IMG/VR virus record: IMGVR_UViG_3300043399_000272
Span: 62,001 to 126,000 of that record
Reading direction: 5' to 3' (one strand)
Length of the DNA stretch: 64,000 bases
In this document: in pieces, positions 457 through 55,558 of the stretch
How positions within the stretch are numbered: the first letter of the stretch is position 1
Layout of the letters: every line of letters starts with the position of its first letter
Notes under the pieces: generated by a model
What the model was told of the DNA's origin: nothing
Databases searched by the model: none
Seen by the model: only the letters and a program-made list of their open reading frames with translations
Made by a program: the position numbers and the translations under genes

Positions 457-470
457 TTTGAAAGACTTTG

Positions 471-1130
471 ATGAAAGATAACTTACTATCCAATATTTTA
501 ATTAAGCCCAATGTCATTTCTAAAGAGGGTCTTGCCTTTATCACAGATTATGTTAGACAACAAAACAAAATTGATCTGTCTGTGTTTGATCCTGAAGAAA
601 CTAACAAGTCAGGGAAGACTTCGTTCACGGTTGACAAAAAAGTACGTGATACACAAATGATAGATATTTCTGGCATCATGGATACTATCGTAGACTTATA
701 TAGAGACATTGTTTTTAATATCATCAATCCAGCATATGATTTTGAGATTAGGGATTCTGAAGCTCCGCAGTTATTATCTTATTCAGTAGGCGGACATTAC
801 TTGCCGCACGTAGACGGTCAATCATTATGGAAAGCTCCTGACGGAGAAGTATTATGGAGGAAATCAACAGATCGTGACTTGAGTACTGTTCTTTTTCTAA
901 ACGATGATTTTGAAGGGGGTGATTTTGTATTCCCAGAACTTAGAGTCAGAATTCGTCCTGAGCCTGGTATGCTAGTATGCTTCCCTTCAACTTTTAGTTA
1001 TTTACATGGTGTAGAACCAGTAACTAAAGGACATCGTTTATCTATGGTAAATTGGATGACTGTCAAGGGTTTCACGACACTAGATGAAGAAACTAAGATT
1101 ATTAACGATAAATATAATATCAAAGGATAA
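471..1130 (+). CDS. 2OG-Fe(II) oxygenase, prolyl-4-hydroxylase-like
   Basis: HxD (PHVDG), STVLFLNDDFEGGDF, distal His and Arg (YLHGVEPVTKGHR); ATG at 471 (track starts at TTG 468). Confidence 0.9.
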   Translation: MKDNLLSNILIKPNVISKEGLAFITDYVRQQNKIDLSVFDPEETNKSGKTSFTVDKKVRDTQMIDISGIMDTIVDLYRDIVFNIINPAYDFEIRDSEAPQLLSYSVGGHYLPHVDGQSLWKAPDGEVLWRKSTDRDLSTVLFLNDDFEGGDFVFPELRVRIRPEPGMLVCFPSTFSYLHGVEPVTKGHRLSMVNWMTVKGFTTLDEETKIINDKYNIKG

Positions 1131-1135
1131 TAATT

Positions 1136-1501
1136 ATGCAATATTTAAAACACTACTACGTTGACAGCAGCAATCCATCAATATATTTAACTGAGAGCAA
1201 CATAGCACCGAACGGAAAAACACATCCGTTGATAGATGGGTTAGATGTAAAGATTTGGATCAATGAGCCACAATCAACAGTAGATTACTGTTTATCTGTA
1301 TGTCCAGATACTACTACTGTTACAGTAGTAACAGGCATTGAAGTATTAACATTTGATCAATGGGCAGATCAAGCAGAATCTCACTTCAATGAAGTCAAAG
1401 GTGATAGTTCCATAGTAATGAATAAGTCTAGTTTAGAAACAGTCATGCAGGCTTACTATGATTTAGCTGTTGAAAACGCTCCAGATATACCGCAACCATA
1501 A
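1136..1501 (+). CDS. hypothetical protein
   Basis: 121-aa ORF tightly packed between co-oriented genes. Confidence 0.7.
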   Translation: MQYLKHYYVDSSNPSIYLTESNIAPNGKTHPLIDGLDVKIWINEPQSTVDYCLSVCPDTTTVTVVTGIEVLTFDQWADQAESHFNEVKGDSSIVMNKSSLETVMQAYYDLAVENAPDIPQP

Positions 1502-1506
1502 AAAAT

Positions 1507-2124
1507 ATGAAGTTCAAGTATGCAGTTGTAGATGATTTCTACAATAATCCATATGATATAAGAAAATACGCACTGTCATTAGATTACCCCGAACCTTTTG
1601 AGGGATATACATATCCGGGAAGGAACTCTACGAAAAGTGTATATGACCAATCACTGCATAACGAGATAGAAAAAATTTGCGGTAGTAAACTTAGATATCC
1701 TAAATCTGATACGGAGGCGGGATATTTTAGACTTTCAACAGAAAACGACACGTTTGAACAATATATTCACGTTGATCCTGGTTGGGATATTGCTGGGGTA
1801 TTGTATTTAAATCCACCAAATCAGTGCGAAATTGAAGGTGGTACTAGTTTTTGGATGCACAAAAAATTAGGAATTGAGCATTGTCCTAGAAACCCTGAAG
1901 AAGCCGCACTATTAGGTTATGATACGTATCATAGTATTCGTGAAAACTTAATTTACGGGGACGGATTAGATGACACTAAATGGTTAAAGTACTTAATGGT
2001 TCCCATGAAGTTCAATCGTTTAGTGTTGTTCGATTCTCTTTTATGGCATAGTCACAATGCAAACTTTGGTGATAAAAAAGAAAACGCACGTTTAGTGCAG
2101 TTGTTCTTCTTAAAATACGCATAA
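1507..2124 (+). CDS. 2OG-Fe(II) oxygenase-like protein (DUF6445-like)
   Basis: HxD (YIHVDP), AGVLYLNP, GGTSFW, KFNRLVLFDSLLWHS. Confidence 0.8.
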   Translation: MKFKYAVVDDFYNNPYDIRKYALSLDYPEPFEGYTYPGRNSTKSVYDQSLHNEIEKICGSKLRYPKSDTEAGYFRLSTENDTFEQYIHVDPGWDIAGVLYLNPPNQCEIEGGTSFWMHKKLGIEHCPRNPEEAALLGYDTYHSIRENLIYGDGLDDTKWLKYLMVPMKFNRLVLFDSLLWHSHNANFGDKKENARLVQLFFLKYA

Positions 2125-2127
2125 ATA
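2120..2127 (+). promoter_or_regulatory. T4-type late promoter-like motif (CATAAATA)
   Basis: Close match to the TATAAATA late -10 element; about 50 nt upstream of ATG 2176; gp55-like sigma is encoded in the window. Confidence 0.55.
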
Positions 2128-2175
2128 CTATATTCATTAGTCGTTCTTAGTGCGGCTACCTCAGGATATAGATAT

Positions 2176-3121
2176 ATGAGTCAAATAACAGATGTTTTCA
2201 CATTAAATGAAGTATATGAATTAATGTTAGATGGGGTATGGCCTACTACGTATTATCAAGTAGTATGGTGATAGGGGTACTTTTGGTGGCGGTGATACAG
2301 GGTCAAAAACAAACGGTATTGACTACATAACAATTTCTACAACTGGTAATGCTACTAGTTTTGGTACTTTGACTAGTTCTAGAGATGGTGTTCGTGCGTG
2401 TTCTAATGGAACACGAGGTGTGTTTGCAGGAGGCTGGATTACATCAGCTCAAAACACAATAGATTATATAACTATTGCTACAACAGGTAATGCTACTAAT
2501 TTTGGCACTCTAGTTACAGCTAGGCAATCGGTCGGTGCCTGCTCTAACGGAATTAGGGGTGTATTTGGGGGCGGTTCTACAGCTACTAAAACTAGTGCAA
2601 TAGATTATATAACAATTGCTACAACTGGTAATGCTACTAGTTTTGGTACTTTAACAGTTGCTAGAACTAGTTTAGCTTCTTGTGCTAATAGTACCCGTGG
2701 TATATTTGCTGGTGGAGACCTTCAAGGAGCCTATAGTGATGTTATCGATTATATAACTATTGACACTACGGGTAATGCTACTAACTTTGGTACTTTAACT
2801 GTAAGTAGAGGTTGGATTAACGGCTGCTCGGATACAACACGAGGTGTATTTGCGGGTGGTTACGCTGGAAGTTTTAGTAATGTTATTGACTATATAACAA
2901 TTGCTACAACTGGTAATGCTACGTATTTCGGCGATTTAAGTTCTACTAATCATGATCTTGGTGCATGCTCAAATGGTACTAGGGGAGTATTTGCTGGCGG
3001 TAGTAATGGAACTAGATTTAATAAAATAGAATATATCGTTATACAGACATTAGGCAATGCTGTAAATTTTGGCACATTAACAGTAGCCAAATCAAATTTT
3101 GGTGCGTGTTCAGGAACCTAA
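2176..3121 (+). CDS. six-repeat beta-propeller-like virion protein split by a +1 frameshift near 2260-2271 (programmed frameshift, pseudogene or assembly error)
   Basis: SD-like AGGA plus ATG 2176 gives MSQITDVFTLNEVYELMLDGVWPTTYYQVVW* (stop 2269-2271). The next frame is open from 2264 (YGDRGTFGGG...) and holds six ~47-aa repeats (RGxFxGG...IDYITIxTTGNATxFGxL). The track start at 2369 cuts the first repeat. Confidence 0.75.
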
Positions 3122-3138
3122 AAATAATTTTTCATCTT

Positions 3139-3176
3139 AATAAAGGATTGATATATAAAAGTATCAATCCTTTATT
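3139..3176 (+). terminator. 15-bp perfect hairpin, probable intrinsic terminator or regulatory stem
   Basis: AATAAAGGATTGATA / TATCAATCCTTTATT with an 8-nt loop (TATAAAAG), ending in a T-rich tract. Confidence 0.6.
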
Positions 3177-3182
3177 TTATCC

Positions 3183-3827
3183 ATGAAAAAAATTTTAATA
3201 GCCACGCCCTGCCTAGATCAAAAAGTTGACGCATACTTTGTACACAGCTTATGTGAATCCATCAAGTTAGGTTTAAAACACGACCTAGATATTAAATGTG
3301 TGTTTCTAGCTAATGAGAGTATTCTACCGATGGCTAGGAATGAACTTTTTGCATTAGCTTACAATGAAAAATATGACACAGTTGTGTTCATTGACGATGA
3401 CGAATATTGGAATCCACAGGTTCTTATAGACATAATTCAATCTGATAAGGATGTAATTTCAGTACCTGTCGTTAATAAATCTGACAACAAACCAACTACA
3501 TTTAACGTTTGGATAGATCCTCAAATTGTAATAGATACTGACGGATACGTAAAAATTAACAAATGTGGCACAGGATTTTTAAAACTTTCTCAAAAAGTAC
3601 TTAATGATCTTTGGGATTCTAATACAGAGTTAGTGTTTAGAAACAAGAAGTTAAAAAACATTTGCGAGTATACATACGTCAACGGCGACTTTGTTGGTGA
3701 AGACATTACGTTATCCAACAAAATTAAAGAACTAGGTTATGACATTTGGCTTAACCCAAATCATACAGTATCCCACATTGGTAATAAAATGTATGTCGGT
3801 GACTTTAAACAGCAACATAAACTATGA
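3183..3827 (+). CDS. glycosyltransferase, GT-A fold (GT2-like)
   Basis: KILIATP N-terminal strand, ILPMARN, DxD-like FIDDD, GTGFL, GEDI and VSHIG motifs. Confidence 0.75.
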   Translation: MKKILIATPCLDQKVDAYFVHSLCESIKLGLKHDLDIKCVFLANESILPMARNELFALAYNEKYDTVVFIDDDEYWNPQVLIDIIQSDKDVISVPVVNKSDNKPTTFNVWIDPQIVIDTDGYVKINKCGTGFLKLSQKVLNDLWDSNTELVFRNKKLKNICEYTYVNGDFVGEDITLSNKIKELGYDIWLNPNHTVSHIGNKMYVGDFKQQHKL

Positions 3828-5107
3828 TCGACATAATCATTCCAACATTATGGATGTCCAGTGACTTTGAAAAGTCGTTAGAAATGTATGTTGAGCAAGC
3901 ACTAGTTAACAAAGTCATTATCATAGACAATGCTATTAATAACAGACCTGACTTCAACGTATTGAAGAATCCTAAAATAGAGTTGATATCATATGGAAGA
4001 AACATCTACGTAAATCCTGCATGGAATGAAGGTGTTTTAAGAGCTACATCAAAAATCATTGGAATAATAAATGATGATATCAAAGTAGACAGTACTGTTT
4101 TTCAGTTAATCACAGATTTCAATTTGTCTCAGGGTGATATCATAGGTGTGAATCTTAGAGGATATCAAAACAATTACAAAATCGATGATTACATCGATAC
4201 CAAAGAAGAAATAGTAAAACTAAACTACAACGAGAATCAACCAATCGGCGGTCAAGCATGGGCGTTTGGTATTTGTATGTTTATGTTGCGTGAATCTTAT
4301 ACCCCTATACCTTCACTATATCAAGTATGGTACGGTGATGATTACTTAGCTCAACGTGCAAAAACTGTATATGCATTGAACTCTAACAAGATAAAAGGTA
4401 AGATTTCTGAAACGCTTACTAAGTTCAATGATCCAAATAGTGATGTGTCAAAAAGAATTGAATTAGACTCAAAAAACCTAATCAAATTCAATCATTTTAA
4501 GAACAGTAATAATTGGGACATTCCCCATAATATGATTAAGATGTATGCCCAACAGCGTAATCAAACACATAACTCTATATTTGAGATGGAATACCAAAAC
4601 GCAAGAAATACACCAAGTGACATTAATGAAAACGTTCACGAACTATATGAACTGGCTAAAGAATGTAAAACAGTAGTAGAAATGGGCGTTAGAACAGGTG
4701 TCAGTACAAGAGCATTCTTGAATACTGATGTTTCATTGATTTCATATGATATAGTTTTGAATTCAAACGTGCAAAGACTGTTTAATGAAGCTAAAAGAGT
4801 GGGCAAACAGGTTCAATACATAAAAGCCAATGTATTAGAGATTGAAATAGGTAACGTTGATTTGTTGTTTATTGACACATTGCACACTTACGATCAATTA
4901 AAACAAGAATTAAAACTACACGGGAACAAAGCCAATAAATATATTGCATTTCACGATACCCACACGTTTGGATTGCGGGATGAAGTCGGTAACGACAACA
5001 AAGGGCTTCTATCAGCTATTATAGAATTTTTGATGGAAAATTCTCATTGGACTTTCTACAAATACAAAACAAATAACAATGGATTAACTATCCTTAAAAG
5101 GACATAA
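3824..5107 (+). CDS. fusion of a GT2-like glycosyltransferase and a class I SAM methyltransferase (Methyltransf_24-like)
   Basis: N-terminal IIIPT, IIIDN, VNPAWN, INDD; C-terminal VVEMGVRTGVST and DLLFIDTLHTYDQL...IAFHDT. Confidence 0.75.
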   Translation: MIDIIIPTLWMSSDFEKSLEMYVEQALVNKVIIIDNAINNRPDFNVLKNPKIELISYGRNIYVNPAWNEGVLRATSKIIGIINDDIKVDSTVFQLITDFNLSQGDIIGVNLRGYQNNYKIDDYIDTKEEIVKLNYNENQPIGGQAWAFGICMFMLRESYTPIPSLYQVWYGDDYLAQRAKTVYALNSNKIKGKISETLTKFNDPNSDVSKRIELDSKNLIKFNHFKNSNNWDIPHNMIKMYAQQRNQTHNSIFEMEYQNARNTPSDINENVHELYELAKECKTVVEMGVRTGVSTRAFLNTDVSLISYDIVLNSNVQRLFNEAKRVGKQVQYIKANVLEIEIGNVDLLFIDTLHTYDQLKQELKLHGNKANKYIAFHDTHTFGLRDEVGNDNKGLLSAIIEFLMENSHWTFYKYKTNNNGLTILKRT

Positions 5108-5110
5108 TAA

Positions 5111-6010
5111 ATGAAATATAGTATTTTTCATCTACAAGGTGGAATTGGGAAACACATCGCAGCAACGGCTGTTGCCAAAGTTATTAAAAACAATCACCCT
5201 GATCGAAAACTCATAGTTGTATGTGCATATCCTGATATTTTTAACAACTTAGATTTTGTAGATAGAGTGTACCAGTTAGGTAATACCAGTTATTTTTACC
5301 AAAACTACGTACAAGACAAAGATTCTTTACTATTTCATCACGAGCCATATTACACTACAGACCATATTCACAAGAAACTACCGTTGATCCAAAACTGGTG
5401 TAAGATGTACGGTCTTACTTATAACGGTGAGAAACCTGTAATCAAGTTTAACAAACTTCAATATGATCTTTCTAAAAGATATTGGGTCAAAGGTAGTAAA
5501 CCTATCATGGTTATTCACACTAATGGTGGCATGATGACTACTGATGCGAAACCTTATGCATGGACTCGTGACATGCCGGAATCAATTGCACAAGAATTAG
5601 TTAATCACTACAAAGCAGATTACATGATCTATCAAGTTACAAAAATTAACTCACCTAAATTAAAAGGTGCTAATCATGTTTTTGCTACACAACAACAAGC
5701 ATTATCGTTGATGGAATTCTTCAGTTTAATGCTACACAGTGAAAAAAGAATTCTAATAGATTCTTCGCTTCAACACGCTGCTGCTGCATTAAATAAACCT
5801 TCAACTGTATTATGGAATGGCACAAGTCCAACTGTTTTTGGTTATGACTTACATGACAACATAACTACAAAGATTCCATACAACTTTAAACTTCCAGGAA
5901 GTTACTTGTTTGACTTTGATTTTAATGGTAATGAAATTGAATATCCATTTACTGAAGATCAAAATCTTTTTGATATAAACGAAATCATTGCGTCGGTAGA
6001 CAAACAATAA
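5111..6010 (+). CDS. glycosyltransferase, GT-B fold (GT9/heptosyltransferase-like)
   Basis: GGIGKHI, LIVV..YPDIF, ILIDSSLQHAAAAL.KPSTVLW, typical of GT9-like proteins. Confidence 0.75.
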   Translation: MKYSIFHLQGGIGKHIAATAVAKVIKNNHPDRKLIVVCAYPDIFNNLDFVDRVYQLGNTSYFYQNYVQDKDSLLFHHEPYYTTDHIHKKLPLIQNWCKMYGLTYNGEKPVIKFNKLQYDLSKRYWVKGSKPIMVIHTNGGMMTTDAKPYAWTRDMPESIAQELVNHYKADYMIYQVTKINSPKLKGANHVFATQQQALSLMEFFSLMLHSEKRILIDSSLQHAAAALNKPSTVLWNGTSPTVFGYDLHDNITTKIPYNFKLPGSYLFDFDFNGNEIEYPFTEDQNLFDINEIIASVDKQ

Positions 6011-6020
6011 GGAACAAATT

Positions 6021-6941
6021 ATGACTAAGAAAAAATATTATTTTATGGCTGGACTACCTAGAAGCGGTAGTACTATGCTATCAGCTATTTTAAATCAAAA
6101 CCCTAGATTTTATTCAGGACCTAGTTCTCCTGTAATACCTACAATGCTAGCGATAGAGAATTCTTTAAGCAATGATGAATTGTTCTTGGCTTATCCTAAA
6201 ATAGACTTTGGGAAGAATCTGATAGCTTCTGTTATGGATCATTACTACGCAGATGTAGATAAGCCAATTGTATTTGAGAAGAACCGTAGCTGGGTTAATA
6301 GAATGGAGTATATCAAAGGTTATTTTGGAATTGAACACCCTAAAGTATTGTACCCAGTACGAGATGTTTCTGAAATCTTAGCTTCATTTATATCTATGAT
6401 TAATAGAAACCCGCATATTATTAACGACCGCATCAACTTCATTGACCAGGCACTTGTTCAACAAGGCATACCAATCAATGATGTTACTCGCTGCCAAGCT
6501 ATTGCCGGTCCCGGTATCTTGGGTCAATCGTTTGATGGACTAAAGAAGGCGTTAGCTGAAGGATATAGAGCAAATATTCATTTCATTGAGTACAAAGACT
6601 TAGTTAATAATCCACGTGAAACAATGAAGAAAGTGTATGAATTCTTAGGTGAACCGGAATATCATCACGATTTTAAGAATCTAAAGAACTTGCACAGAGA
6701 AGACGATGTAAAAATCTATGGTTTTATTGACATGCACGAAGTCAGACCCGAAGTCAAATCAACAGCACTTTATCCAGAAGATGTATTACCTGCTAGTGTA
6801 TTAGACAGTGTACGTGGTGCAGAATTCTGGCGTGAAATAGATGATGTACCACTTAGTGATAGCACTGATACTGAAATTAAGCCACAACAGAGCTTTTTTG
6901 GACAAGTAATCAATGATGATAGTGATACTAAGCTAATCTAA
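6021..6941 (+). CDS. PAPS-dependent sulfotransferase family protein
   Basis: 5'-PSB loop GLPRSGSTML; 3'-PB motif VRDVSEILASF; IEYKDLV.NP. Confidence 0.85.
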   Translation: MTKKKYYFMAGLPRSGSTMLSAILNQNPRFYSGPSSPVIPTMLAIENSLSNDELFLAYPKIDFGKNLIASVMDHYYADVDKPIVFEKNRSWVNRMEYIKGYFGIEHPKVLYPVRDVSEILASFISMINRNPHIINDRINFIDQALVQQGIPINDVTRCQAIAGPGILGQSFDGLKKALAEGYRANIHFIEYKDLVNNPRETMKKVYEFLGEPEYHHDFKNLKNLHREDDVKIYGFIDMHEVRPEVKSTALYPEDVLPASVLDSVRGAEFWREIDDVPLSDSTDTEIKPQQSFFGQVINDDSDTKLI

Positions 6942-6943
6942 AC

Positions 6944-6975
6944 ATAAAGGTCTCTAAACGAGGCCTTTATTTTTT
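6944..6975 (+). terminator. intrinsic terminator
   Basis: ATAAAGGTCTC-TAAAC-GAGGCCTTTAT stem (one G-U pair) followed by a T run. Confidence 0.75.
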
Positions 6976-7041
6976 CCTACCTTTTTTTGTACATTCTTTG
7001 TTTAGGCATAAATTATAATATACATTTTATAAAGGTAAACC

Positions 7042-7266
7042 ATGGAACATCCAATTTTCAACATTCAACTTACACTTGATCAAGTAAACCTAATTCTAGC
7101 TACTGTAGGTAAATTACCATACGAGTCAATTGCCCCATTGATGAATTCTATTCAAGTTCAAGCTAGTACACAAATGCAGCAGTATAATGCTGCCACCGCA
7201 CAACAAGCAGAAGCAGAATCACAAGCATCACAAGCATCAGAAGATACAGGCAATATTATTCAATAA
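7042..7266 (+). CDS. small hypothetical protein
   Basis: 74 aa, AAAGG SD upstream, helical sequence. Confidence 0.7.
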   Translation: MEHPIFNIQLTLDQVNLILATVGKLPYESIAPLMNSIQVQASTQMQQYNAATAQQAEAESQASQASEDTGNIIQ

Positions 7267-7275
7267 GGAATAAAG

Positions 7276-8070
7276 ATGGTACAGCGTATACTAGTTATGG
7301 GTTTACCTGGTGCAGGCAAAACTTACCTGTCTCAACACATCTTAGAGCATTTACAGATCAACGGTAAAAAAGTAGGTTGGTTAAATGCGGATGATGTTCG
7401 CAAGAAGTATAACGACTGGGATTTCAGCAAGGAAGGACGTATCCGTCAAAGTTTACGCATGCGTGAACTTGCTGATTCTATGGTTGATATGGACTTTGTA
7501 ATCTGTGATTTTGTTGCACCATTGATTGAAATGCGTAACAACTTTAAAGCAGATTGGACTATTTGGGTCGACACCATAGATAAAGGTCGTTTTGAAGATA
7601 CAAACAAAGTTTTTATACCACCTGAAGTCTATGATTTCAGAATCACTGAACAAAAATCAGAATGGTGGGGTGAATTTATTGCTGCACATATGATTGATAA
7701 TCGTAGACGCCCTACTTTTGACTGGAAAAAAGAAACAGTTCAAATGTTAGGTCGTTGGCAACCATGGCACGAAGGGCATCGTGCATTGTTTGATCGTGCA
7801 ATTGCTAAAACTGGGCAAGTTGTGATTCAAATTCGTGACTGTCAAGGTTGGCAAGGTTCTAATCCTTTTGCGATTGAACAAGTCAAACACTATATCAAGC
7901 GTGATTTAGATCCTCTATATCAAGGTCAATATGAAATTCAAGTTGTTCCTAACATCGTAAACATTACATATGGGCGTGATGTTGGTTACAAGATTGAACA
8001 AGAAGTTTTTGATGATGCCATTCATTCTATTAGCGCAACGAAGATTCGTAAATCATTGGGCCTAAAGTGA
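7276..8070 (+). CDS. cysC: adenylylsulfate kinase-like domain fused to an HxGH nucleotidyltransferase domain
   Basis: P-loop GLPGAGKT, LNADDVR, DWDFSKEGRIRQ; C-terminal GRWQPWHEGH and ISATKIR. Confidence 0.75.
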   Translation: MVQRILVMGLPGAGKTYLSQHILEHLQINGKKVGWLNADDVRKKYNDWDFSKEGRIRQSLRMRELADSMVDMDFVICDFVAPLIEMRNNFKADWTIWVDTIDKGRFEDTNKVFIPPEVYDFRITEQKSEWWGEFIAAHMIDNRRRPTFDWKKETVQMLGRWQPWHEGHRALFDRAIAKTGQVVIQIRDCQGWQGSNPFAIEQVKHYIKRDLDPLYQGQYEIQVVPNIVNITYGRDVGYKIEQEVFDDAIHSISATKIRKSLGLK

Positions 8071-8291
8071 ATAAGTATCATGTTCGTTTCAATACTAAAC
8101 ACAACGGTAGTGATTTAGTTTGGAGAATTTTTGAAAATGGTGTAGAACATTTAGCAACAGATGTTCGCATCATTGGAGAAACTTACACCGAATGCACACA
8201 CGAACACGGTGAAACCAAATGGAACATAGCCTGCAATGGGCGTATAATTTGGGTTGACAAAGTTGCCGTTATAGTAACTGGGAAAGATTGA
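8067..8291 (+). CDS. small hypothetical protein
   Basis: 74 aa; overlaps both neighbours (translational coupling). Confidence 0.65.
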   Translation: MNKYHVRFNTKHNGSDLVWRIFENGVEHLATDVRIIGETYTECTHEHGETKWNIACNGRIIWVDKVAVIVTGKD

Positions 8292-8497
8292 TGAAAGAAA
8301 CATCGCTACGTAGCTTAGCGAAAACTATTAGTTGGCGCTTGACTGGTTCTAGCGCCACTTTTCTTATTAGTTACCTTATATCACACAATCTTAGTGTAGC
8401 AGGTACTATTGCAATAGTACAGTTGACCGCTAATACGATTCTATACTACATTCATGAAAGAGTATGGAATCGTATTAAGTGGGGTTCCTATAGATAG
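8291..8497 (+). CDS. DUF2061-like small membrane protein
   Basis: RSLAKTISWR and YYIHERVWNRIKWG with hydrophobic helices; TGATG overlap with the previous gene. Confidence 0.8.
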   Translation: MKETSLRSLAKTISWRLTGSSATFLISYLISHNLSVAGTIAIVQLTANTILYYIHERVWNRIKWGSYR

Positions 8498-8499
8498 TA

Positions 8500-9600
8500 T
8501 TACAAGCTGGGTAACGCCTCATAATCGATTGCATCACTCATAACACCAATAACATAGTTAGTAGATTCATTCTCTTGTAACGCAGTTTGCTTTTTACTAG
8601 TATCAGAATGTTTGTTAAACCAAGGAATAGGTGTTGTCTTTGGGTGAGGTTCTGTGTACTTAATACCGATTTCTTTCAATGCACTAACCGCAGTGTAATC
8701 AACAAAATCTTTAAGAACAGTCGCATTTAGACCAATAACTGGTCCTTTTTGAAACAAGTAATCTGCCCATTCTTTTTCTTCACGAATTACATCTAAGTAA
8801 ATTTTATAAACTTCGTCTTTAGTTTCTTCTGCAATTTTAGCAAAACGTGAGTCTTCTTTAACAACTTGGTTAATTAAGAAAGCAGTCCAACCTTTGTGTA
8901 ATAGTTCGTCTTGTAGAATCAAACTGATGATGTTGCCATTACCAATAAAGATTTTGTTTTCTACCATTGCTAGACTTGTCGCAAAAGAAACCATAAATCT
9001 AAATGCTTCTAATGCATAACTAGCGTGTAGTGCTAGATAGATTGCTTTAATGTGTTCATCTTCAGTAACAGTTTCACCTAGTTCTTTGCGACAGTTAATT
9101 TGGTGTAGTGCTTCATAGTAATTACCGACGCTAGAAGCCATACTAACAATTTCTTGTGTATCATGAATAGTGTTGAATACTTCTTTAGGAACATTGTAGA
9201 TGTTACGAATAATATGGCTGTAACTACGACTATGAATGTTTGTTTCAAAGAATGTCCAGTTATAAACTAGTGCTTCTAGTTCAGGTAAACTGATTACAGG
9301 TGTAAAAATCTGACTAGGACCTCTTCCCTGTAAACTATCTAGTGCAGTCTGACGCAATAAATTACTCGTAAAAATATGACGAACAGTTTCACTAGCATCT
9401 TTGAAATCACTAGCATCTTTAGTTAAACTGATTTCTTCCGGGACCCAAAAGAATCCACGTGCAGTTTGTTCAAAATCTGCAATCTTTTTATATTTTACTT
9501 CTTCGAATCGTTGAATAGTTACCGGGCCTTCTGGGTCTAGAAACATTTTGCGACTAAGATAATCTGTTTTTGTGTTTAAGTTATATTGTGCTTGGCTCAT
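8500..9600 (-). CDS. nrdB: ribonucleotide reductase class Ia beta subunit
   Basis: LDSLQGR, ETNIHSRSY, LEAFRF, DELLH iron ligands and radical Tyr; C-terminal NYVIG. Confidence 0.97.
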   Translation of the reverse strand: MSQAQYNLNTKTDYLSRKMFLDPEGPVTIQRFEEVKYKKIADFEQTARGFFWVPEEISLTKDASDFKDASETVRHIFTSNLLRQTALDSLQGRGPSQIFTPVISLPELEALVYNWTFFETNIHSRSYSHIIRNIYNVPKEVFNTIHDTQEIVSMASSVGNYYEALHQINCRKELGETVTEDEHIKAIYLALHASYALEAFRFMVSFATSLAMVENKIFIGNGNIISLILQDELLHKGWTAFLINQVVKEDSRFAKIAEETKDEVYKIYLDVIREEKEWADYLFQKGPVIGLNATVLKDFVDYTAVSALKEIGIKYTEPHPKTTPIPWFNKHSDTSKKQTALQENESTNYVIGVMSDAIDYEALPSL

Positions 9601-10184
9601 TTTTTCTTTACATTTAAAATTATATCAGCGAATGGATCAGGTGCAGCTACTGGGTGCTTAGCACATGCTTTGGGATCTCCTTGACCTGCTTCTGTTAAGA
9701 ATTCAATTCCTTTAGCAATCTGTCCAATTGGGCAGCTACAGTCTGCAACAGTAGTACCGTTAATGGGATCTTTTTTGTATCTACACATCATACCCCAGCA
9801 ATTAGCAGACCCTTGTGCTACGTCTCCTGAGCAAGATTGAACTTTCGCTCTTGTAGCACTCTTTGGAGTTTGTACAAAGTTATTTGCTTCTTGTGGATAA
9901 TGAATGCGAGGAGCAAATAGACTCCATACTTGCGTAGTAGGATCATCTACATTACATGACCCTTTCATTACACCAGCACTTAAATCTGCAATACTAGGAC
10001 CCTCTAGTACTGGACATTTACAAACAACTTCTGGGTATGAAACACCGTTATTAGTTGTAATAGTTTTTCCAGTCTTAGTACAAGTGCTAGCCGCACACAA
10101 TGCATACTTACCATTACAAATAGTAAGATCACCGGCAAATACGGACGTTGCAAAGAATAGAAATAATAGAATAATTTTTTTCAT
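9597..10184 (-). CDS. secreted cysteine-rich hypothetical protein
   Basis: Sec-type signal peptide MKKIILLFLFFATSVFA; 12 Cys in the mature part. Confidence 0.7.
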   Translation of the reverse strand: MKKIILLFLFFATSVFAGDLTICNGKYALCAASTCTKTGKTITTNNGVSYPEVVCKCPVLEGPSIADLSAGVMKGSCNVDDPTTQVWSLFAPRIHYPQEANNFVQTPKSATRAKVQSCSGDVAQGSANCWGMMCRYKKDPINGTTVADCSCPIGQIAKGIEFLTEAGQGDPKACAKHPVAAPDPFADIILNVKKK

Positions 10185-10194
10185 AATTTTTCAC

Positions 10195-11400
10195 TTAAAA
10201 TTGATCTTCTTCAGTTGAATGTTTATTAGCAACTGTAGACTTTGCTCCAACTGCTTCACTAATTAGGTCGAAATATCCAACACCTACTTCACGTTGATGT
10301 TTGACTGTGGTAAAGCCACGGTCTTGTGCAGCAAACTCTCGTTGTTGCATTTCACTGTAACCTGCCATGCCTCTTGCCTTGTAAGCCTCTGCTAGTTCGA
10401 ATGTAGCTAAGTTTACACTATGAAAGCCTGCAAGTGTAATGAATTGGAACTTATAACCCAATTCTCCTAGTTCTCTTTGGAATGTTTCACATTCGTCTTC
10501 ACTCAAAAACTTACGCCAATTAAAACTAGGACTGCAATTATAGGCAAGCATTTGGTCAGGATACTGTGCATGGATGGCGTCAGCGAACTTTCTAGCTTGT
10601 GCGATATCAGGCGTTGAAGTTTCGAACCATAAGAGATCAGCGTAAGGGGCATAAGCAAGACCTCTGCTAATACAAGCATCAATACCGTTTTTAAATTTGT
10701 AAAAACCTTCTTCAGTTCTTTCATTGATTACAAAGTCCTTGTCTAATGGGTCGTGGTCACTAGTAATAAGTGTAGCTGCTTCGGCATCTGTTCGTGCCAT
10801 AATAACAGTATCAACACCTGCAACATCTGCTGCTAGTCGTGCAGCATTCAATGTACGAATCATTTGGCTTGTGGGTACTAGAACTTTACCACCCAAGTGA
10901 CCACATTTCTTTTCACTAGCTAATTGGTCTTCAAAGTGTACACCAGCGGCGCCTGCTTCAATCATTGCTGCCATTAGCTCATATGCATTCAATGCACCAC
11001 CGAACCCAGCTTCTGCATCTGCAACGATAGGCAAGAAATAGTCTGTTTCAACTTTGCCTTCGCTGTGTTCAATTTGGTCTGCACGACGGAAAGCGTTGTT
11101 AATACCTTTAACAACACGAGGTACAGAATCAACAGGATAGAGTGATTGATCCGGGTATGTTTGATTTGAGGTATTGTTTGCACCGGCAACTTGCCATCCT
11201 GACAAGTAAATTGCTTTTAAGCCAGCTTTAGCATGTTGTACTGCCATTTGTCCATTATATGCACCTAGTGTATTGATGTATGGTTCTGTTGCTAGCAATT
11301 CACGTAGTTTTGTCGCTCCGCGTTTCGCTAGTGTGTGTTCAATCTGTACGCTACCTTGTAGCTTTTTAACTGTGTCTTGTGTGTAGTTTCTCTTTTTCAT
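10195..11400 (-). CDS. aceA: isocitrate lyase
   Basis: [25 protein letters not shown], catalytic [27 protein letters not shown]. Confidence 0.97.
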
Positions 11401-11409
11401 TTAGTTTCC

Positions 11410-11733
11410 TTATACTCTAAAACTTTCTCCGCACCCGCATCTATCACGTTCATTCGGGTTCTTAAATTCAAATCCTTCATTCAATCCATTACGTACATAA
11501 TCAATTACGGTGCCATACAAATAAGGTCGATATTTTGGATCCATAAATACTTTGACTCCGTTGCTCTCGTGATGTTCTATGCAATGCGGGTTTTCGTTAT
11601 CTAAAAATTCAAGCACGTAAGCTAGACCACTGCAACCAGTAGTTTTAACACCTATTAGAACACCCAATCCTTTTCCGCGCTTACTGATTTGTTGTTTGAT
11701 TTTTTTAGCAGCAATATCAGTGACTGTTATCAT
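11410..11733 (-). CDS. iscA: A-type Fe-S carrier IscA
   Basis: GVKTTGCSGLAY and C-terminal CGCGESF. Confidence 0.93.
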   Translation of the reverse strand: MITVTDIAAKKIKQQISKRGKGLGVLIGVKTTGCSGLAYVLEFLDNENPHCIEHHESNGVKVFMDPKYRPYLYGTVIDYVRNGLNEGFEFKNPNERDRCGCGESFRV

Positions 11734-12103
11734 GCTTCTTCCTGTAATCTTCTACTGCGGCTTTAATAGCGTCTTCGGCTAAGATTGAACAATGAATTTT
11801 AACAGGGGGCAATGCAAGTTCTTCTGCGATTTGACTATTCTTTAATGCTGCTGCTTCGTCCAACGTTTTGCCTTTGACCCACTCAGTAACAAGACTACTG
11901 GATGCGATGGCAGAGCCACAGCCGTATGTTTTAAACTTTGCATCAGTAATAATACCATCTTCTACTTTTATCTGTAGTTTCATCACATCACCGCAAGCTG
12001 GGGCACCGACCATACCAGTACCTACATCAACGTCATCTTTTGAAAACGATCCTACATTTCTAGGATTTTCATAATGATCTATAACTGCTTCGCTATATGC
12101 CAT
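11717..12103 (-). CDS. iscU: Fe-S scaffold IscU
   Basis: YSEAVIDHYENPRNVG, APACGD, YGCGSAIASSS, LPPVKIHCS; all three Cys intact. Confidence 0.97.
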   Translation of the reverse strand: MAYSEAVIDHYENPRNVGSFSKDDVDVGTGMVGAPACGDVMKLQIKVEDGIITDAKFKTYGCGSAIASSSLVTEWVKGKTLDEAAALKNSQIAEELALPPVKIHCSILAEDAIKAAVEDYRKKHDNSH

Positions 12104-12116
12104 ATCCGTCTCCTAT

Positions 12117-12443
12117 TTAAATTGAAAAGCTACTACCACATCCACATGTAGTTTCTGCATTAGGGTTACTGATACTGAAACTACTGCCCATTAAATCTTC
12201 TTTGTAGTCAATTACTGCACCTGTCAAATATTGCATACTCATTGCATCAACTACAACTTTATATTTCTCGTCAACTGGAAATTCAAAATCATCTTCGTTT
12301 TGTTCAGGGTCAAACGTAAAACCGTACTGAAAACCTGAACACCCGCCACCTTGAACGAATGTCCTAAGTTTTAAATTTGCATCATTTTCTTCATTAAGAA
12401 GGTCAACGATTTTGAACTTTGCTGATTCTGTTATGGTAATCAT
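12117..12443 (-). CDS. erpA: A-type Fe-S carrier ErpA-like
   Basis: [16 protein letters not shown] and CGCGSSF. Confidence 0.9.
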
Positions 12444-14755
12444 AATTTACATGCTTCACAATCTTCTTCTATCAGTTCGATGTTGTTAGGTAAATCTAAA
12501 ACTGCCTCGTCTTTTTGTTTACTTCCTTGTTTATTAATCAATGAGTAATAGAATGTCTTAATACCCCACATCTGAGATTGCATTAGATTCTTAGCAATCA
12601 ATGTTGTCGGTACTTTACGACCTTCAAAATGTGCAGGATTATAGAAAGTATTTGTTGAAATAGATTGGTCAACATATGCTTGCAATACAGCGGCTGTTTT
12701 TAGATACGCATCGCAATCTTTCTGTTCCCACATTAACTGATATTTATTCTTTAACTTATGGTATTCAGGTACAACTTGAGTAAACGATCCTGCTTTACTT
12801 TCTTTGACAGTAATCAAACTCATTGGCATTTCGATACCGTTAGTTGAGTTAATAACAACGCTAGAACTTTCAACAGGTGCAATAGCCATTTGAGTAGCGT
12901 TTCGTACTCCATAAGCTCTCATTTGGGCACGAAGGCCTTCCCAATTTAACTCTGGCGTAAAGTCTGCTAATTCATTGACACCTGGTGCTCTGCGCTCCCA
13001 AGGGAAGATACCTTGACCATAATATGTCTTATCGCTATCAACACATCTACCTCTTTCCTGTGCTAACTCAACACTAGCTTCAGTCAAGTAGAATGCTTGA
13101 TGTTCCATAAAAGATTTTACTTCCTTCAGTGCTTCTTCTGTACCATACTTTAGTCCACGTTTGGCATGCCAGTAAGCTAAGTTAGTAACACCGATACCCA
13201 ATGGGCGGATCTCGTCATTGCTTAATTTACTTTGTATACTCAAGAAATCTTGGTAATCAAGTATATTGTTAAGGCTACGGTGCAAAATACGGCAAGCACG
13301 GCGCATGTCTTCTGGATTACGGAAGGCGCCCCAGTTGATTGATCCGAGTGTGCAAAGAGCGATACGACCAGAATCATCATCCAGACGTTTAAAGGGTTTA
13401 GTAGGAAGAAGTATTTCACAGCAAAGATTACTCTGGTAAATTGTATGATAATCAGGATCAAAAGGACCTTGATTCATTACGTTATCGATAAAAACTAGAT
13501 AGATACGTCCAGTGTCTGTACGCTCTTTAAGGATACCGCCCTTGAAGACTTCCTCAGCACTCATTACTTTCTTTCGAAGGCTCTTATTTTTTTCATACTT
13601 GACATATAATTCTTCAAATAATTCGGTGCTCGAATAGAAAGCCTCATAGAGGTCGGGTACCTCGTTAGGGTCGAAAAATGTGATATTTTCCTTGTTCTTA
13701 AATCTACGCCAAAAGAATGCTGATAGTACCACCCCGTAATCCATGTGTCGTACTCGTGTTTCTTCTGTTCCTTGATTGTTTTTGAGAACAATAAGGTCAT
13801 CAAATTGGTGATGCCATATGGGATAGAAAACTGTAGCACTAGCATTACGAATGCCTCCTTGTGAACAACTACGCAAATCACCGAACCACTTCTTTAAAAA
13901 AGGTATCATCCCAGTGTGCATGATTTCCCCTCCACGAATGGGAGAACCTAATGAACGTAGACGACCAATCTCTAAACCGATGCCAGCACGTTTACTAGCA
14001 TACTTTGCCATCATTTCGCCACTAGCAAAAATGGAGTCTAAATCATCATCACTGCGAATGAGTACACAACTTGAAAACTGCTTGGTAGGAGTACCAAGAC
14101 CAGCTAATACAGGTGTTGCTAATGTAAATAGCCCATCACTAGCAGCATTGTAATATTCTTTGATATAGCGCATTCTTGCGCTGTTAGGTTCTTCTTTATG
14201 AAAAACAGTAGCCGCAGCAATCATGTAACGAACTTGCGGCGTTTCATATGTTTGTTTAGTAGAACGATTGCGAACTAGGTATTTTTCAATCAATTGTTCG
14301 ATTGCAGCATACGAATACTGTTCATCTTTTGAATGGTCTAGCATGTCATCCATCTTGTCCCATTCTTCTTCTGTATACCACTCTAATAGTTCAGGTGTGT
14401 ATAAACCTGTAGCAATATTAGTTTTAACTATTTCGTACAGTCTGGGAGGTGTATAGTCGCCATAGACATCCTTACGTAGCATACTTACACGTTGTTTACC
14501 AGCAACGTATTGGTAGTTTGTGTGACCGATTTCTGGATTTGACTCTACATCGATTAAATCTACGATAGCACGTAGAGTAATTTCATCGATTTCTTTAGTA
14601 GTGATTCCATCATAAAAATGTAACTGCGATTTAATCTCAATCATACTTGAGCTAACATCTGCGATCCCTTTACAAACTTTTGCTACTTGCGCTTGCCATT
14701 TTTCTAGGTTAAGTGGTTCTTTTTTTCCAGAACGCTTAGTTACGTTTATAATCAT
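12440..14755 (-). CDS. nrdA: ribonucleotide reductase class Ia alpha subunit with N-terminal ATP cone
   Basis: VTKRSG ATP cone, QFSSC, SNLCCEI, CTLGSIN, TFYY, C-terminal CEAC. Confidence 0.97.
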
Positions 14756-14873
14756 GTGTTGCCTGTTGTGTTTTTATATTAAATTGTACTGCTTTAAAAA
14801 ATGTTTTAGATTATTACTTATCACGGATCGGACTAGTAATTCAATATATATTTTACGCTGTAGGTATGACTAA

Positions 14874-15027
14874 TAGTATATCATATACTACTCTAGGTAA
14901 CAATAGTAGTTAGAACTGTTTGGATAATCAGACATTGACTAGCTATTAGTTTGGGTAGTCAAATGTAGGAAAGGTTACAAAATTTTGTAACCTTTTTATG
15001 GTATAATATGAATAGTTCATATTATAC
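14874..15027. repeat. cluster of inverted repeats upstream of nrdA
   Basis: 17-bp palindrome 14874-14890; stem 14932-14966; perfect 26-bp palindrome 14970-14995; 12-bp stem with 3-nt loop 15001-15027. Confidence 0.85.
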
Positions 15028-15037
15028 TTATCAACAA

Positions 15038-55542: not shown

Positions 55543-55558
55543 ATTATAGGCATAACAA

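What the first reader, a model, noticed from the sequence alone, without database searches (positions are those of the whole stretch)
8500..14755. RNR operon split by an Fe-S assembly module and a glyoxylate-shunt enzyme (nrdA-erpA-iscU-iscA-aceA-secreted protein-nrdB)
Seen: five genes inserted between the RNR subunits, all on one strand, with overlaps or gaps of 13 nt or less, implying a single transcript. Established: class Ia NrdB needs a di-iron/tyrosyl cofactor; in E. coli its maintenance involves the [2Fe-2S] ferredoxin YfaE encoded next to nrdB; ICL bypasses the CO2-releasing TCA steps, and its substrate comes from Fe-S-dependent aconitase. Inference: a coordinated iron and carbon rewiring cassette that keeps dNTP synthesis and anaplerosis running under iron or oxidative stress. 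I do not know of this gene order being described.
Basis: partly seen in the sequence, partly recalled or inferred. Interest (0 to 1): 0.85.

Follow-up and report, generated by a model that had tools for sequence, protein, structure and literature searches.

The report
Phage RNR operon carrying metabolic cargo genes
A jumbo phage has isocitrate lyase, three iron-sulfur assembly genes and an unknown secreted protein wedged between the two genes of its DNA-precursor enzyme; related phages show this gap is a general drop-in site for accessory genes, not a fixed purpose-built cassette.

Summary
Seven intact minus-strand genes lie at 8500-14755: nrdA, an ErpA-type carrier, iscU, an IscA-like carrier, isocitrate lyase (ICL), a secreted Cys-rich ORF and nrdB. 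Junctions are -4, +13, -17, +9, +10 and -4 nt, with no terminator-like site inside.

The window is a T4-like jumbo myovirus. The inserted genes have phage-like codon GC, and the same neighbourhood occurs on a second contig, so a chimera is unlikely.

About 160 related viral loci change the interpretation.
- The nearest cultured phages, and 42 of 116 related loci, have contiguous nrdA-nrdB(-grx).
- Elsewhere the gap holds ICL, a class II aldolase, Fe-S genes, Fe/Mn superoxide dismutase, a 2OG-Fe(II) oxygenase, an HD-domain protein or a homing-endonuclease-like ORF.
- On the NrdB tree, ICL needs at least 11 gains or losses and Fe-S genes at least 24.
- The exact seven-gene order occurs only in this phage.

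So this is a cargo hot spot, not a conserved cassette. An iron/redox theme still recurs. ICL also sits beside iscU in other contexts without RNR and lies near it in the C48C1 lineage.

Phage ICL and phage IscU/A-type carriers are already published. The arrangement and the hot spot appear undescribed. Function is untested.

The parts
14756..15037 (-). 282-nt non-coding stretch upstream of nrdA. It holds a 20-nt perfect palindrome (14973-14992), promoter-like hexamers, and at about 14771-14886 a decayed remnant of the 3' end of the gene ('c6') that precedes nrdA in related phages.
   Evidence: Sequence and promoter scan. The remnant is 78.5% identical over 121 nt to the c6 3' end in L286/L291, E 5e-20. 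I read an in-frame stop in the window copy by eye from the alignment. This marks a rearrangement scar.
12440..14755 (-). nrdA, class Ia ribonucleotide reductase alpha subunit (771 aa) with an ATP cone
   Evidence: NCBIfam PRK09103 833.5 bits (cutoff 813); Pfam ATP-cone, Ribonuc_red_lgN and lgC. Catalytic Cys/Asn/Glu, the YY pair and a C-terminal CxxC are visible in the translation.
12117..12443 (-). ErpA-type A-type Fe-S carrier (108 aa); its start overlaps the nrdA stop (ATGA)
   Evidence: NCBIfam ErpA equivalog 153.8 bits (cutoff 117); Pfam Fe-S_biosyn. The Cys...CGC ligands are present.
11717..12103 (-). iscU Fe-S scaffold (128 aa)
   Evidence: TIGR01999 224.4 bits (cutoff 192.4). Three Cys, Asp, His and the LPPVK chaperone-binding motif are present. 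A Shine-Dalgarno-like AGGAG lies upstream.
11410..11733 (-). IscA-like A-type Fe-S carrier (107 aa); overlaps iscU by 17 nt
   Evidence: The best match is IscA, but below the equivalog cutoffs (135.5 against 150.6). It passes the A-type carrier subfamily model TIGR00049 (99.9 against 58.8). The Cys...CGC ligands are present.
10195..11400 (-). aceA, isocitrate lyase (401 aa), a member of a virus-specific ICL clade that lacks the cellular N-terminal segment
   Evidence: NCBIfam PRK15063 690.6 bits (cutoff 562). The KKCGH loop, DAEAGFGG and NCSPSFNW are invariant in alignment A1. In the tree, 152 of 153 viral ICLs sit on one side of a branch with support 99. N-terminal truncation.
9597..10184 (-). 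orf195, a predicted secreted Cys-rich protein of unknown function from a virus-only family; its stop overlaps the nrdB start (ATGA)
   Evidence: Translation. The family has 322 clusters and no Pfam match. The protein atlas places it with viral clusters only. The AF2 model is confident (pLDDT 86.5, pTM 0.80), has no PDB match and matches only uncharacterised viral proteins.
8500..9600 (-). nrdB, class I RNR beta subunit (366 aa) with a non-canonical E-T-N-I-H metal motif
   Evidence: Pfam Ribonuc_red_sm 142 bits. It is below the class Ia beta equivalog cutoff (295.7 against 346). The alignment to E. coli R2 is. Asp, Glu, Glu/His, the radical Tyr and the C-terminal Tyr are present.
8431..8477 (.). 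17-nt-arm inverted repeat just past the nrdB stop, inside the 3' end of the convergent DUF2061 gene (8288-8497). It is a possible hairpin at the end of both transcription units but has no T-run.
   Evidence: the repeat finder pair I3, 94% complementary; sequence.

Best explanation
This is a real, intact and probably co-transcribed block in a T4-like jumbo myovirus.

Its core is the phage's own class Ia RNR operon. The ancestral form is nrdA-nrdB-glutaredoxin. In this phage lineage the gap between nrdA and nrdB, and the stretch after the glutaredoxin gene, act as landing pads for accessory genes.

In this genome the gap has collected three things:
- an ISC-type Fe-S trio (ErpA-type carrier, IscU scaffold, IscA-like carrier);
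- a virus-clade isocitrate lyase;
- a secreted Cys-rich protein of unknown function.

The cargo sits inside the RNR operon, so it is probably made together with RNR while DNA precursors are being synthesised (inferred).

Inferred mechanism:
- The Fe-S trio would raise the cell's capacity to build and deliver Fe-S clusters. It would rely on the host's cysteine desulfurase and chaperones.
- ICL would divert isocitrate to succinate and glyoxylate. The host would supply malate synthase.

The seven-gene combination is not a fixed unit. Each part has been gained, lost or moved many times among close relatives, probably helped by the homing endonucleases that frequent RNR genes.
For: Phage identity:
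- T4-type major head protein and portal.
- The capsid protein is 65-69% identical to those of jumbo phages such as Vibrio phage 2.275.O and PA5oct.
- A gp55-like late sigma factor, SbcCD and baseplate hub proteins are present.

Gene identities and intact active sites.

Operon layout.

Ancestral contiguity:
- Xanthomonas phage X1 and Stenotrophomonas phage Mendera have adjacent nrdA and nrdB, followed in X1 by a glutaredoxin two genes on.
- 42 of 116 related loci have less than 300 nt between nrdA and nrdB.

Variable cargo in the gap:
- ICL in 38 loci, class II aldolase in 21, Fe-S genes in 7.
- Also Fe/Mn SOD, a 2OG-Fe(II) oxygenase, an HD-domain protein, a methyltransferase-like ORF and a NUMOD3 endonuclease-like ORF.

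Repeated gain and loss on the NrdB tree: ICL at least 11 changes, Fe-S at least 24, aldolase at least 12.

Mobile elements nearby: the closest relative, L045, has nrdA split by a 235-aa ORF and carries a GIY-YIG/NUMOD3 endonuclease close by.

This locus was itself rearranged:
- A remnant of gene c6 lies upstream of nrdA.
- No glutaredoxin follows nrdB.
- The flanks are unlike those of every other locus.

Not a chimera:
- GC3 of the cargo is 0.21-0.30, against 0.20-0.31 for the phage structural genes.
- The same protein and neighbourhood occur on a second, 260-kb contig.
- Similar arrangements occur in independent metagenomes, for example nrdA-carrier-iscU-ICL-nrdB in L012, L028 and L029.
Against: - There is no expression data. 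Co-transcription and timing are inferred from spacing alone.
- The true promoter is unknown, because the upstream region is a rearrangement scar.
- The 160 loci were chosen by similarity to ICL or NrdB, and a few are duplicates, so the counts are not unbiased frequencies.
- All loci belong to one phage lineage. Shared synteny by descent could inflate the apparent linkage of RNR with Fe-S genes and ICL.
- A hot-spot model does not by itself explain why iron- and redox-related genes are so common among the cargo.
Confidence: 0.7

Rival explanations
1. A selected iron/redox support module.

On this view the Fe-S trio, ICL and neighbouring redox genes are kept next to RNR because they work together. 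They would:
- keep the oxygen- and iron-dependent di-iron/tyrosyl RNR charged;
- keep Fe-S aconitase feeding isocitrate to ICL;
- lower NADH and ROS production when the host is iron-limited or oxidatively stressed.
For: - Fe-S genes lie within about 9 kb of the RNR genes in 38 of 91 loci with enough flank, in three different relative positions.
- A CPYC glutaredoxin follows nrdB in nearly all relatives.
- Fe/Mn SOD and a 2OG-Fe(II) oxygenase occupy the same gap in other relatives.
- ICL lies directly beside Fe-S genes in differing permutations, with RNR (the window; L012, L028, L029; L023) and without it (iscU-ICL-carrier in L069; ICL-iscU-carrier-aldolase in L241/L242).
- In the unrelated T4-like C48C1 lineage, iscU lies 2-7 kb from ICL in about 17 of 80 loci. 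C48C1 is the only genuine GenBank phage record with ICL and one of very few with IscU.
- Iron limitation induces the glyoxylate shunt in bacteria, and aconitase is the iron-containing enzyme feeding ICL (PMC6618146).
- The E. coli RNR cofactor is maintained by the [2Fe-2S] ferredoxin YfaE (Wu et al. 2007, as listed in PMC8463856).
Against: - The parts are gained and lost independently.
- The share of loci with Fe-S genes looks similar, roughly a third or more, in the ICL-selected and the NrdB-selected sets. This is my reading of the lists, not a formal test.
- ICL sits with a fatty-acid desaturase and no RNR in 20 loci.
- The same gap holds cargo with no iron link: aldolase, HD domain, PGDYG, methyltransferase-like, orf195.
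- No YfaE-like ferredoxin, IscS, HscBA or malate synthase is in the window.
- NrdB uses a di-iron centre, not an Fe-S cluster.
- AMGs cluster in variable islands anyway.
Confidence: 0.3
2. ICL is placed in the nucleotide operon mainly to supply carbon skeletons for nucleotide synthesis.
- Glyoxylate would be converted to glycine for purines.
- Succinate and malate would be converted to oxaloacetate and aspartate for purines and pyrimidines.

On this view iron stress is not the reason for its position.
For: - ICL is the commonest cargo inside or right after the RNR operon in the ICL-selected loci (56 of 80).
- A deoxyribonucleotidase is also encoded in the window.
- The pathway logic comes from general biochemistry and was not tested here.
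Against: - No aminotransferase or malate synthase accompanies ICL.
- ICL also occurs next to a desaturase or next to Fe-S genes without RNR.
- Only 3 of the 80 nearest NrdB loci carry ICL.
Confidence: 0.12
3. The locus is an assembly chimera or recent host-DNA contamination that joins bacterial isc and aceA genes to phage RNR genes.
For: - The genes are of bacterial type.
- The exact order is seen in only one phage genotype.
Against: - GC3 of the cargo matches the phage genes.
- The best sampled cellular ICL is at most 67% identical, whereas 182 viral contigs encode relatives, the 80 fetched being 88-100% identical.
- The viral ICL clade shares an N-terminal truncation that is absent from cellular ICLs.
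- Gene junctions are translationally coupled overlaps.
- Partial versions of the arrangement recur in independent metagenomes.
- The same neighbourhood is on a second contig.
Confidence: 0.02

Closest known systems
E. coli nrdAB-yfaE operon (class Ia RNR with a [2Fe-2S] ferredoxin gene)
   Same: Class Ia RNR subunit genes are transcribed together with an iron-sulfur-related helper gene. This is the established precedent that Fe-S proteins serve the di-iron/tyrosyl cofactor.
   Different: - No ferredoxin is present here.
- The helpers are Fe-S assembly proteins (a scaffold and two carriers).
- They sit between the subunit genes, are accompanied by ICL and an unknown secreted protein, and are optional among close relatives.
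Homing-endonuclease-invaded RNR loci of T4-type phages (T4 mobE between nrdA and nrdB; the split nrdA of Aeromonas phage Aeh1). These examples are from my own knowledge.
   Same: - The nrdA-nrdB region is a recurrent target for inserted DNA.
- Relatives here show a split nrdA (L045) and NUMOD3 or GIY-YIG endonuclease-like ORFs in or near the gap.
   Different: The inserted material in this window is metabolic cargo, not an endonuclease.
Published phage isocitrate lyases: ocean viromes (PMC4053976), the aceBA operon in a 179-kb T4-like environmental genome (PMC5332604), and 98 ICLs in huge phages (bioRxiv 10.1101/2025.02.27.640493)
   Same: - ICL acts as a phage auxiliary metabolic gene.
- The preprint reports that huge phages from freshwater carry ICL without malate synthase, and no malate synthase is found in this window either.
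   Different: - Those reports do not mention ICL embedded in the RNR operon or next to Fe-S genes.
- They also do not mention a virus-specific ICL clade or the N-terminal truncation.
Published viral Fe-S assembly AMGs: IscU and A-type carriers in marine environmental genomes and HMO-2011-type phages (PMC5332604, PMC9038755)
   Same: Phage-borne IscU, ErpA-type and other A-type carrier genes are present without the rest of the isc operon.
   Different: Here all three are adjacent, inside an RNR operon and beside ICL.
Bacterial iscRSUA-hscBA-fdx operon and aceBAK glyoxylate-shunt operon
   Same: IscU, IscA-type carrier and AceA homologues with intact catalytic and ligand residues.
   Different: Only fragments of each pathway are present. 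IscR, IscS, HscBA, Fdx, AceB and AceK are all absent from the window.

Membership tests
Class Ia ribonucleotide reductase, alpha subunit (NrdA) | Scores above the curated class Ia alpha model; ATP cone; catalytic Cys/Asn/Glu; the YY pair; C-terminal Cys pair | tested here: met
   PRK09103 833.5 bits against a cutoff of 813; Pfam ATP-cone plus the lgN and lgC domains. The residues were read from the translation.
Class Ia ribonucleotide reductase, beta subunit (NrdB) | Scores above the curated class Ia beta model | tested here: not met
   NF006576 scores 295.7 bits against a cutoff of 346. The protein does pass Pfam Ribonuc_red_sm. Its best solved relatives are E. coli R2 structures, E 2e-73.
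Class Ia ribonucleotide reductase, beta subunit (NrdB) | Canonical di-iron ligands (Asp, E-x-x-H, Glu, E-x-x-H) and the radical tyrosine | tested here: inconclusive
   Asp, the radical Tyr, the third Glu and the second E-x-x-H are present. The first motif is E-T-N-I-H, with one extra residue between Glu and His. The extra residue is conserved in 52 of 53 related phage NrdBs and in the cultured phages X1 and Mendera. The metal content is unknown.
Isocitrate lyase (AceA) | Scores above the curated ICL model; KKCGH catalytic loop and Mg-binding residues | tested here: met
   PRK15063 690.6 bits against a cutoff of 562. The motifs are invariant in alignment A1. Enzyme activity was not tested.
Complete glyoxylate shunt (aceB/glcB with aceA) | Malate synthase encoded alongside ICL | tested here: not met
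   No malate synthase was found among the window's called genes or larger ORFs, nor next to ICL in the related loci whose neighbours were annotated.
IscU Fe-S scaffold | Scores above the curated model; three Cys, Asp and His ligands; the LPPVK motif | tested here: met
   TIGR01999 224.4 bits against a cutoff of 192.4. The residues were read from the translation.
ErpA (A-type carrier) | Scores above the ErpA equivalog model; the Cys...CGC ligands | tested here: met
   NF010147 153.8 bits against a cutoff of 117. The Cys residues are present.
IscA proper | Scores above the IscA equivalog models | tested here: not met
   TIGR02011 scores 135.5 against 150.6, and NF007049 scores 126.8 against 181. 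The protein does pass the generic A-type carrier subfamily model. It is therefore called IscA-like.
Bacterial isc operon | IscS cysteine desulfurase, the HscBA chaperones and ferredoxin encoded with IscU and IscA | tested here: not met
   None of these is among the annotated window genes. The rest of the phage genome lies outside the window and was not examined.
nrdAB-yfaE type operon | A small [2Fe-2S] ferredoxin gene adjacent to nrdB | tested here: not met
   nrdB is followed 2 nt later by the end of a convergent DUF2061 gene. No ferredoxin domain was found in the block.

The most novel reading that the evidence does not exclude
In a large, abundant group of jumbo phages the RNR operon may serve as a selected 'iron and redox island'. 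Its recurring members would be glutaredoxin, IscU and A-type carriers, Fe/Mn SOD, a 2OG-Fe(II) oxygenase and ICL.

Within that island, ICL and ISC-type Fe-S assembly genes may form a functional pair that recurs in unrelated phage lineages.

The pair would keep host aconitase, and so the supply of isocitrate to ICL, running during infection of iron-poor or oxidatively stressed cells. It would also keep the di-iron RNR working.
Probability: 0.25. Interest if true: 0.6.

Novelty: new variant of a known kind. Interest (0 to 1): 0.4.

Why it matters
Phage-borne ICL and Fe-S assembly genes are each known, so the parts are not new. Three things appear to be undescribed.
- In a very abundant environmental jumbo-phage lineage the gap inside the RNR operon is a recurrent docking site for accessory genes. 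More than 600 viral stretches matched NrdB patterns, and 182 viral contigs encode ICL relatives.
- Much of the cargo in that gap concerns iron or oxidative stress.
- ICL repeatedly lies beside or near iscU in different genomic contexts.

If the linkage is functional, it would point to iron and redox state as a bottleneck for DNA-precursor synthesis during infection in natural waters. It would also offer a concrete, testable set of genes.

If it is only a hot spot, it is still a useful marker locus for following gene flux among these phages.

Tried and rejected
- Chimera or host contamination: rejected on codon GC, the virus-specific ICL clade, recurrence in independent assemblies and coupled gene junctions.
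- A conserved seven-gene cassette: rejected. The exact order was not found in any of about 160 related loci other than the contig the window comes from.
- Flanking direct or inverted repeats that might mark a cassette: only short matches of the kind expected by chance.
- An NrdR-box-like operator upstream of nrdA: I compared the two palindromes by eye with the consensus as I remember it. The match and the spacing are poor, so I dropped the idea.
- Function of orf195: there is no Pfam, PHROG or NCBIfam match. A confident fold model matches nothing in the PDB and only uncharacterised viral proteins in BFVD. The function remains unknown.
- A cellular donor for ICL: the best of the sampled cellular ICLs are 62-67% identical and are spread over many phyla.
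- Habitat metadata: the sample identifiers were not found in the paper library. A freshwater origin is only hinted at by an orf195 homologue binned with a 'Candidatus Nanopelagicus' MAG.
- tRNAs as a clue to the host: none are present in the window.
- Literature on 'C48C1': nothing relevant was found.

Full report
**What is there**

The minus strand between 8500 and 14755 carries seven back-to-back ORFs.
- nrdA: 771 aa, above the class Ia alpha equivalog cutoff, with an ATP cone.
- An ErpA-type A-type carrier: 108 aa, above the ErpA cutoff.
- iscU: 128 aa, above cutoff.
- A second A-type carrier: 107 aa. Its best match is IscA, but it passes only the generic carrier subfamily model.
- Isocitrate lyase (ICL): 401 aa, 690.6 bits against a cutoff of 562.
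- orf195: 195 aa, no family match.
- nrdB: 366 aa. It passes the Pfam small-chain model but falls below the class Ia beta equivalog cutoff.

Ligand and catalytic residues are intact.
- ICL has the KKCGH loop.
- IscU has its three Cys, Asp, His and the LPPVK motif.
- Both carriers have the Cys...CGC ligands.
- NrdA has its catalytic residues.

The junctions are ATGA overlaps at nrdA/erpA and orf195/nrdB, a 17-nt overlap at iscU/iscA, and gaps of 13, 9 and 10 nt. No terminator-like site lies on the minus strand inside the block, and promoter-like hits are at chance level.

**Whose genome it is**

The window is a T4-like jumbo myovirus.
- It has a T4-type major head protein and portal.
- Its capsid protein is 65-69% identical to those of 280-470 kb phages such as Vibrio phage 2.275.O, PA5oct and Rak2-like phages.
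- It has a gp55-like late sigma factor, SbcCD, baseplate hub proteins and a deoxyribonucleotidase.

The window matches IMG/VR contig 3300047548_000628, which is 147.6 kb long. The same ICL and orf195 proteins are also recorded on a 260-kb contig with a similar neighbourhood.

Upstream of the block are tail-fibre genes on the same strand. Downstream, in convergent orientation, are genes for a DUF2061 protein, an APS kinase, a sulfotransferase, a methyltransferase-like protein, a 2OG-Fe(II) oxygenase and a glycosyltransferase.

**Not a chimera**

- Third-position GC of the five inserted genes is 0.21-0.30. That is the same range as the capsid, portal and fibre genes, 0.20-0.31.
- 182 viral contigs encode a relative of this ICL. 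The 80 that were fetched are 88-100% identical to it.
- The best of the sampled cellular ICLs are only 62-67% identical and are spread across many phyla.
- In a tree of 234 ICLs, 152 of 153 viral sequences lie on one side of a branch with support 99. The exception, L245, groups with a Bacteroidota MAG.
- Viral ICLs also lack the conserved N-terminal segment of cellular ICLs. The W..RW motif is present upstream in 59 of 81 cellular genes and in 0 of 80 of the jumbo-phage set.

**What the relatives show**

I fetched 80 loci by ICL similarity, 80 by similarity to the ICL of phage C48C1, and 80 by NrdB similarity.

The nearest cultured phages by NrdB have adjacent nrdA and nrdB. These are Xanthomonas phage X1 (61%) and Stenotrophomonas phage Mendera (56%). 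In X1 a glutaredoxin gene follows two genes further on.

In the environmental lineage the usual frame is as follows:
- upstream of nrdA: a PD-(D/E)XK nuclease, a beta-helix protein and gene c6;
- then nrdA, any cargo, and nrdB;
- downstream of nrdB: a CPYC glutaredoxin, c4, a PAAR-like protein, c8 and a cell-wall hydrolase.

The 116 loci that contain both subunit genes divide as follows.

| Content of the nrdA-nrdB gap | Loci |
|---|---|
| Nothing (under 300 nt) | 42 |
| ICL | 38 |
| Class II aldolase | 21 |
| Fe-S genes | 7 |
| Other cargo only | 13 |

Loci with mixed cargo are counted in more than one row.

The 'other cargo' includes a NUMOD3 endonuclease-like ORF, Fe/Mn superoxide dismutase (four loci), a 2OG-Fe(II) oxygenase, an HD-domain protein, a PGDYG protein and a methyltransferase-like protein.

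Only 3 of the 80 closest NrdB relatives carry ICL.

On the NrdB tree the minimum numbers of state changes are 11 for ICL (5 forced by well-supported branches), 24 for Fe-S genes and 12 for the aldolase.

ICL is also found right after nrdB (10 loci). In 20 loci it sits next to a DesA-type fatty-acid desaturase with no RNR nearby.

The exact order in the window occurs in no other locus.

**This locus has itself been rearranged**

- Positions about 14771-14886 are 78.5% identical over 121 nt to the 3' end of gene c6, which normally abuts nrdA. By my reading of the alignment, the window copy has an in-frame stop.
- The glutaredoxin gene that follows nrdB in nearly every relative is missing. The nrdB stop lies 2 nt from the end of a convergent gene.
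- In the closest relative, L045 (NrdB 91%), the APS kinase and DUF2061 genes lie upstream of c6-nrdA in the same orientation. There nrdA is split by a 235-aa ORF, ICL follows nrdB, and a GIY-YIG/NUMOD3 endonuclease lies nearby.

Homing endonucleases at RNR genes are well known in T4-type phages (my own knowledge). They give a plausible engine for this turnover.

**Interpretation**

The best-supported reading is an RNR operon used as a landing pad for accessory genes. The cargo is probably expressed with RNR, but it is not a co-evolved unit.

- Fe-S genes lie within about 9 kb of RNR in 38 of 91 loci with enough flank. They sit upstream, inside or downstream of the operon.
- Glutaredoxin, SOD and a 2OG-Fe(II) oxygenase share the neighbourhood.
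- ICL lies directly beside Fe-S genes in differing permutations. Some are in the RNR gap (the window; L012, L028, L029; L023). Others lack RNR: iscU-ICL-carrier in L069, and ICL-iscU-carrier-aldolase in L241 and L242, whose ICL belongs to the sister clade.
- In the unrelated T4-like C48C1 lineage, iscU lies 2-7 kb from ICL in about 17 of 80 loci.
- Among 50,697 GenBank phage records, C48C1 is the only genuine phage with ICL and one of very few with IscU.
- Published work shows that iron limitation induces the glyoxylate shunt, and that aconitase is the iron-containing enzyme that feeds ICL (PMC6618146).
- The E. coli RNR cofactor depends on the ferredoxin YfaE (reference listed in PMC8463856).

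Other evidence weighs against a dedicated module.
- The parts vary independently.
- The gap also takes cargo with no link to iron.
- No ferredoxin, IscS, chaperones or malate synthase is in the window.
- All counts come from similarity-selected loci of one lineage.

**orf195**

This is a virus-only family of 322 clusters, with a signal-peptide-like N-terminus and 14 invariant cysteines. The AF2 model is confident (pLDDT 86.5) but matches nothing in the PDB and only uncharacterised viral proteins in BFVD. In other phages its homologues lie in early or nucleotide-metabolism regions, for example upstream of thyX-nrdA-nrdB. Its function is unknown.

**What was already known**

- Phage ICL has been reported in ocean viromes (PMC4053976).
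- It occurs as an aceBA operon in a marine environmental genome (PMC5332604).
- It was found in 98 huge phages, where those from freshwater lacked malate synthase (bioRxiv 10.1101/2025.02.27.640493).
- Viral IscU and A-type carriers are also published (PMC5332604; PMC9038755).

None of the passages I read mentions a link to RNR or an ICL-IscU adjacency. I did not find such a description in the library.

**Verdict**

- This is a new variant of a known kind: an operon loaded with auxiliary metabolic genes.
- Interest is moderate. The parts are known and no function has been tested. The hot spot, its iron/redox flavour and the recurrent ICL-IscU pairing are concrete and testable.

Noticed in passing
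window 9232-9246 (NrdB residues 119-123): The first metal-binding motif of NrdB reads E-T-N-I-H instead of the canonical E-x-x-H, with one extra residue between Glu and His. The extra residue is conserved in 52 of 53 related phage NrdBs and in the cultured phages X1 and Mendera. The protein also scores below the class Ia beta equivalog cutoff. The metal cofactor may be unusual.
   Followed up: partly
window 10195-11400; loci L002-L081 and L166-L244: Viral ICLs form one clade across two unrelated phage groups, the jumbo phages and the T4-like C48C1 group. All lack the roughly 26-residue N-terminal segment that is conserved in cellular ICLs.
   Followed up: partly
L001 7398-8639 (phage C48C1, OQ984149, protein WJE87928.1): The only ICL in a genuine GenBank phage record is annotated as 'hypothetical protein'. 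An IscU gene lies 3 kb away in the same genome.
   Followed up: partly
L260, L265, L273, L280 (for example L265 6469-7020): In sister phages a Fe/Mn superoxide dismutase gene occupies the nrdA-nrdB gap. From the translations, its N-terminal motif reads YHYGK where I would expect a His-rich motif (from memory), so activity is uncertain.
   Followed up: partly
L045 5697-8879 and 4131-4775: In the closest relative, nrdA is split into 506-aa and 323-aa ORFs by a 235-aa ORF with no Pfam match. A GIY-YIG/NUMOD3 SegE-like endonuclease gene lies just upstream.
   Followed up: partly
L013, L046, L058, L063, L075-L080 and others: In 20 loci ICL is followed by a DesA-family fatty-acid desaturase, often with a class II aldolase in between, and no RNR is nearby. 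The desaturase is another di-iron, oxygen-dependent enzyme.
   Followed up: partly
window 9597-10184: orf195 gives a confident predicted fold with no match in the PDB. It belongs to a large virus-only family with a signal-peptide-like N-terminus and 14 invariant Cys. One weak structural match is to a Marseillevirus protein.
   Followed up: yes
window 82-8497 (+ strand): A run of sulfur- and sugar-modification genes converges on nrdB: glycosyltransferase, 2OG-Fe(II) oxygenase, DUF6445, methyltransferase-like, sulfotransferase, APS kinase and DUF2061.
   Followed up: no
window about 55556-64000 (+ strand): An open reading frame of at least 2815 codons runs off the 3' end of the window. It is probably a giant structural or fibre protein.
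   Followed up: no
window 14973-14992 and 14875-14889: Two perfect palindromes lie in the non-coding stretch upstream of nrdA: a 20-nt one just after the tail-fibre gene, and a 15-nt AGTATATGATATACT. Their role as terminator or operator is unknown.
   Followed up: partly
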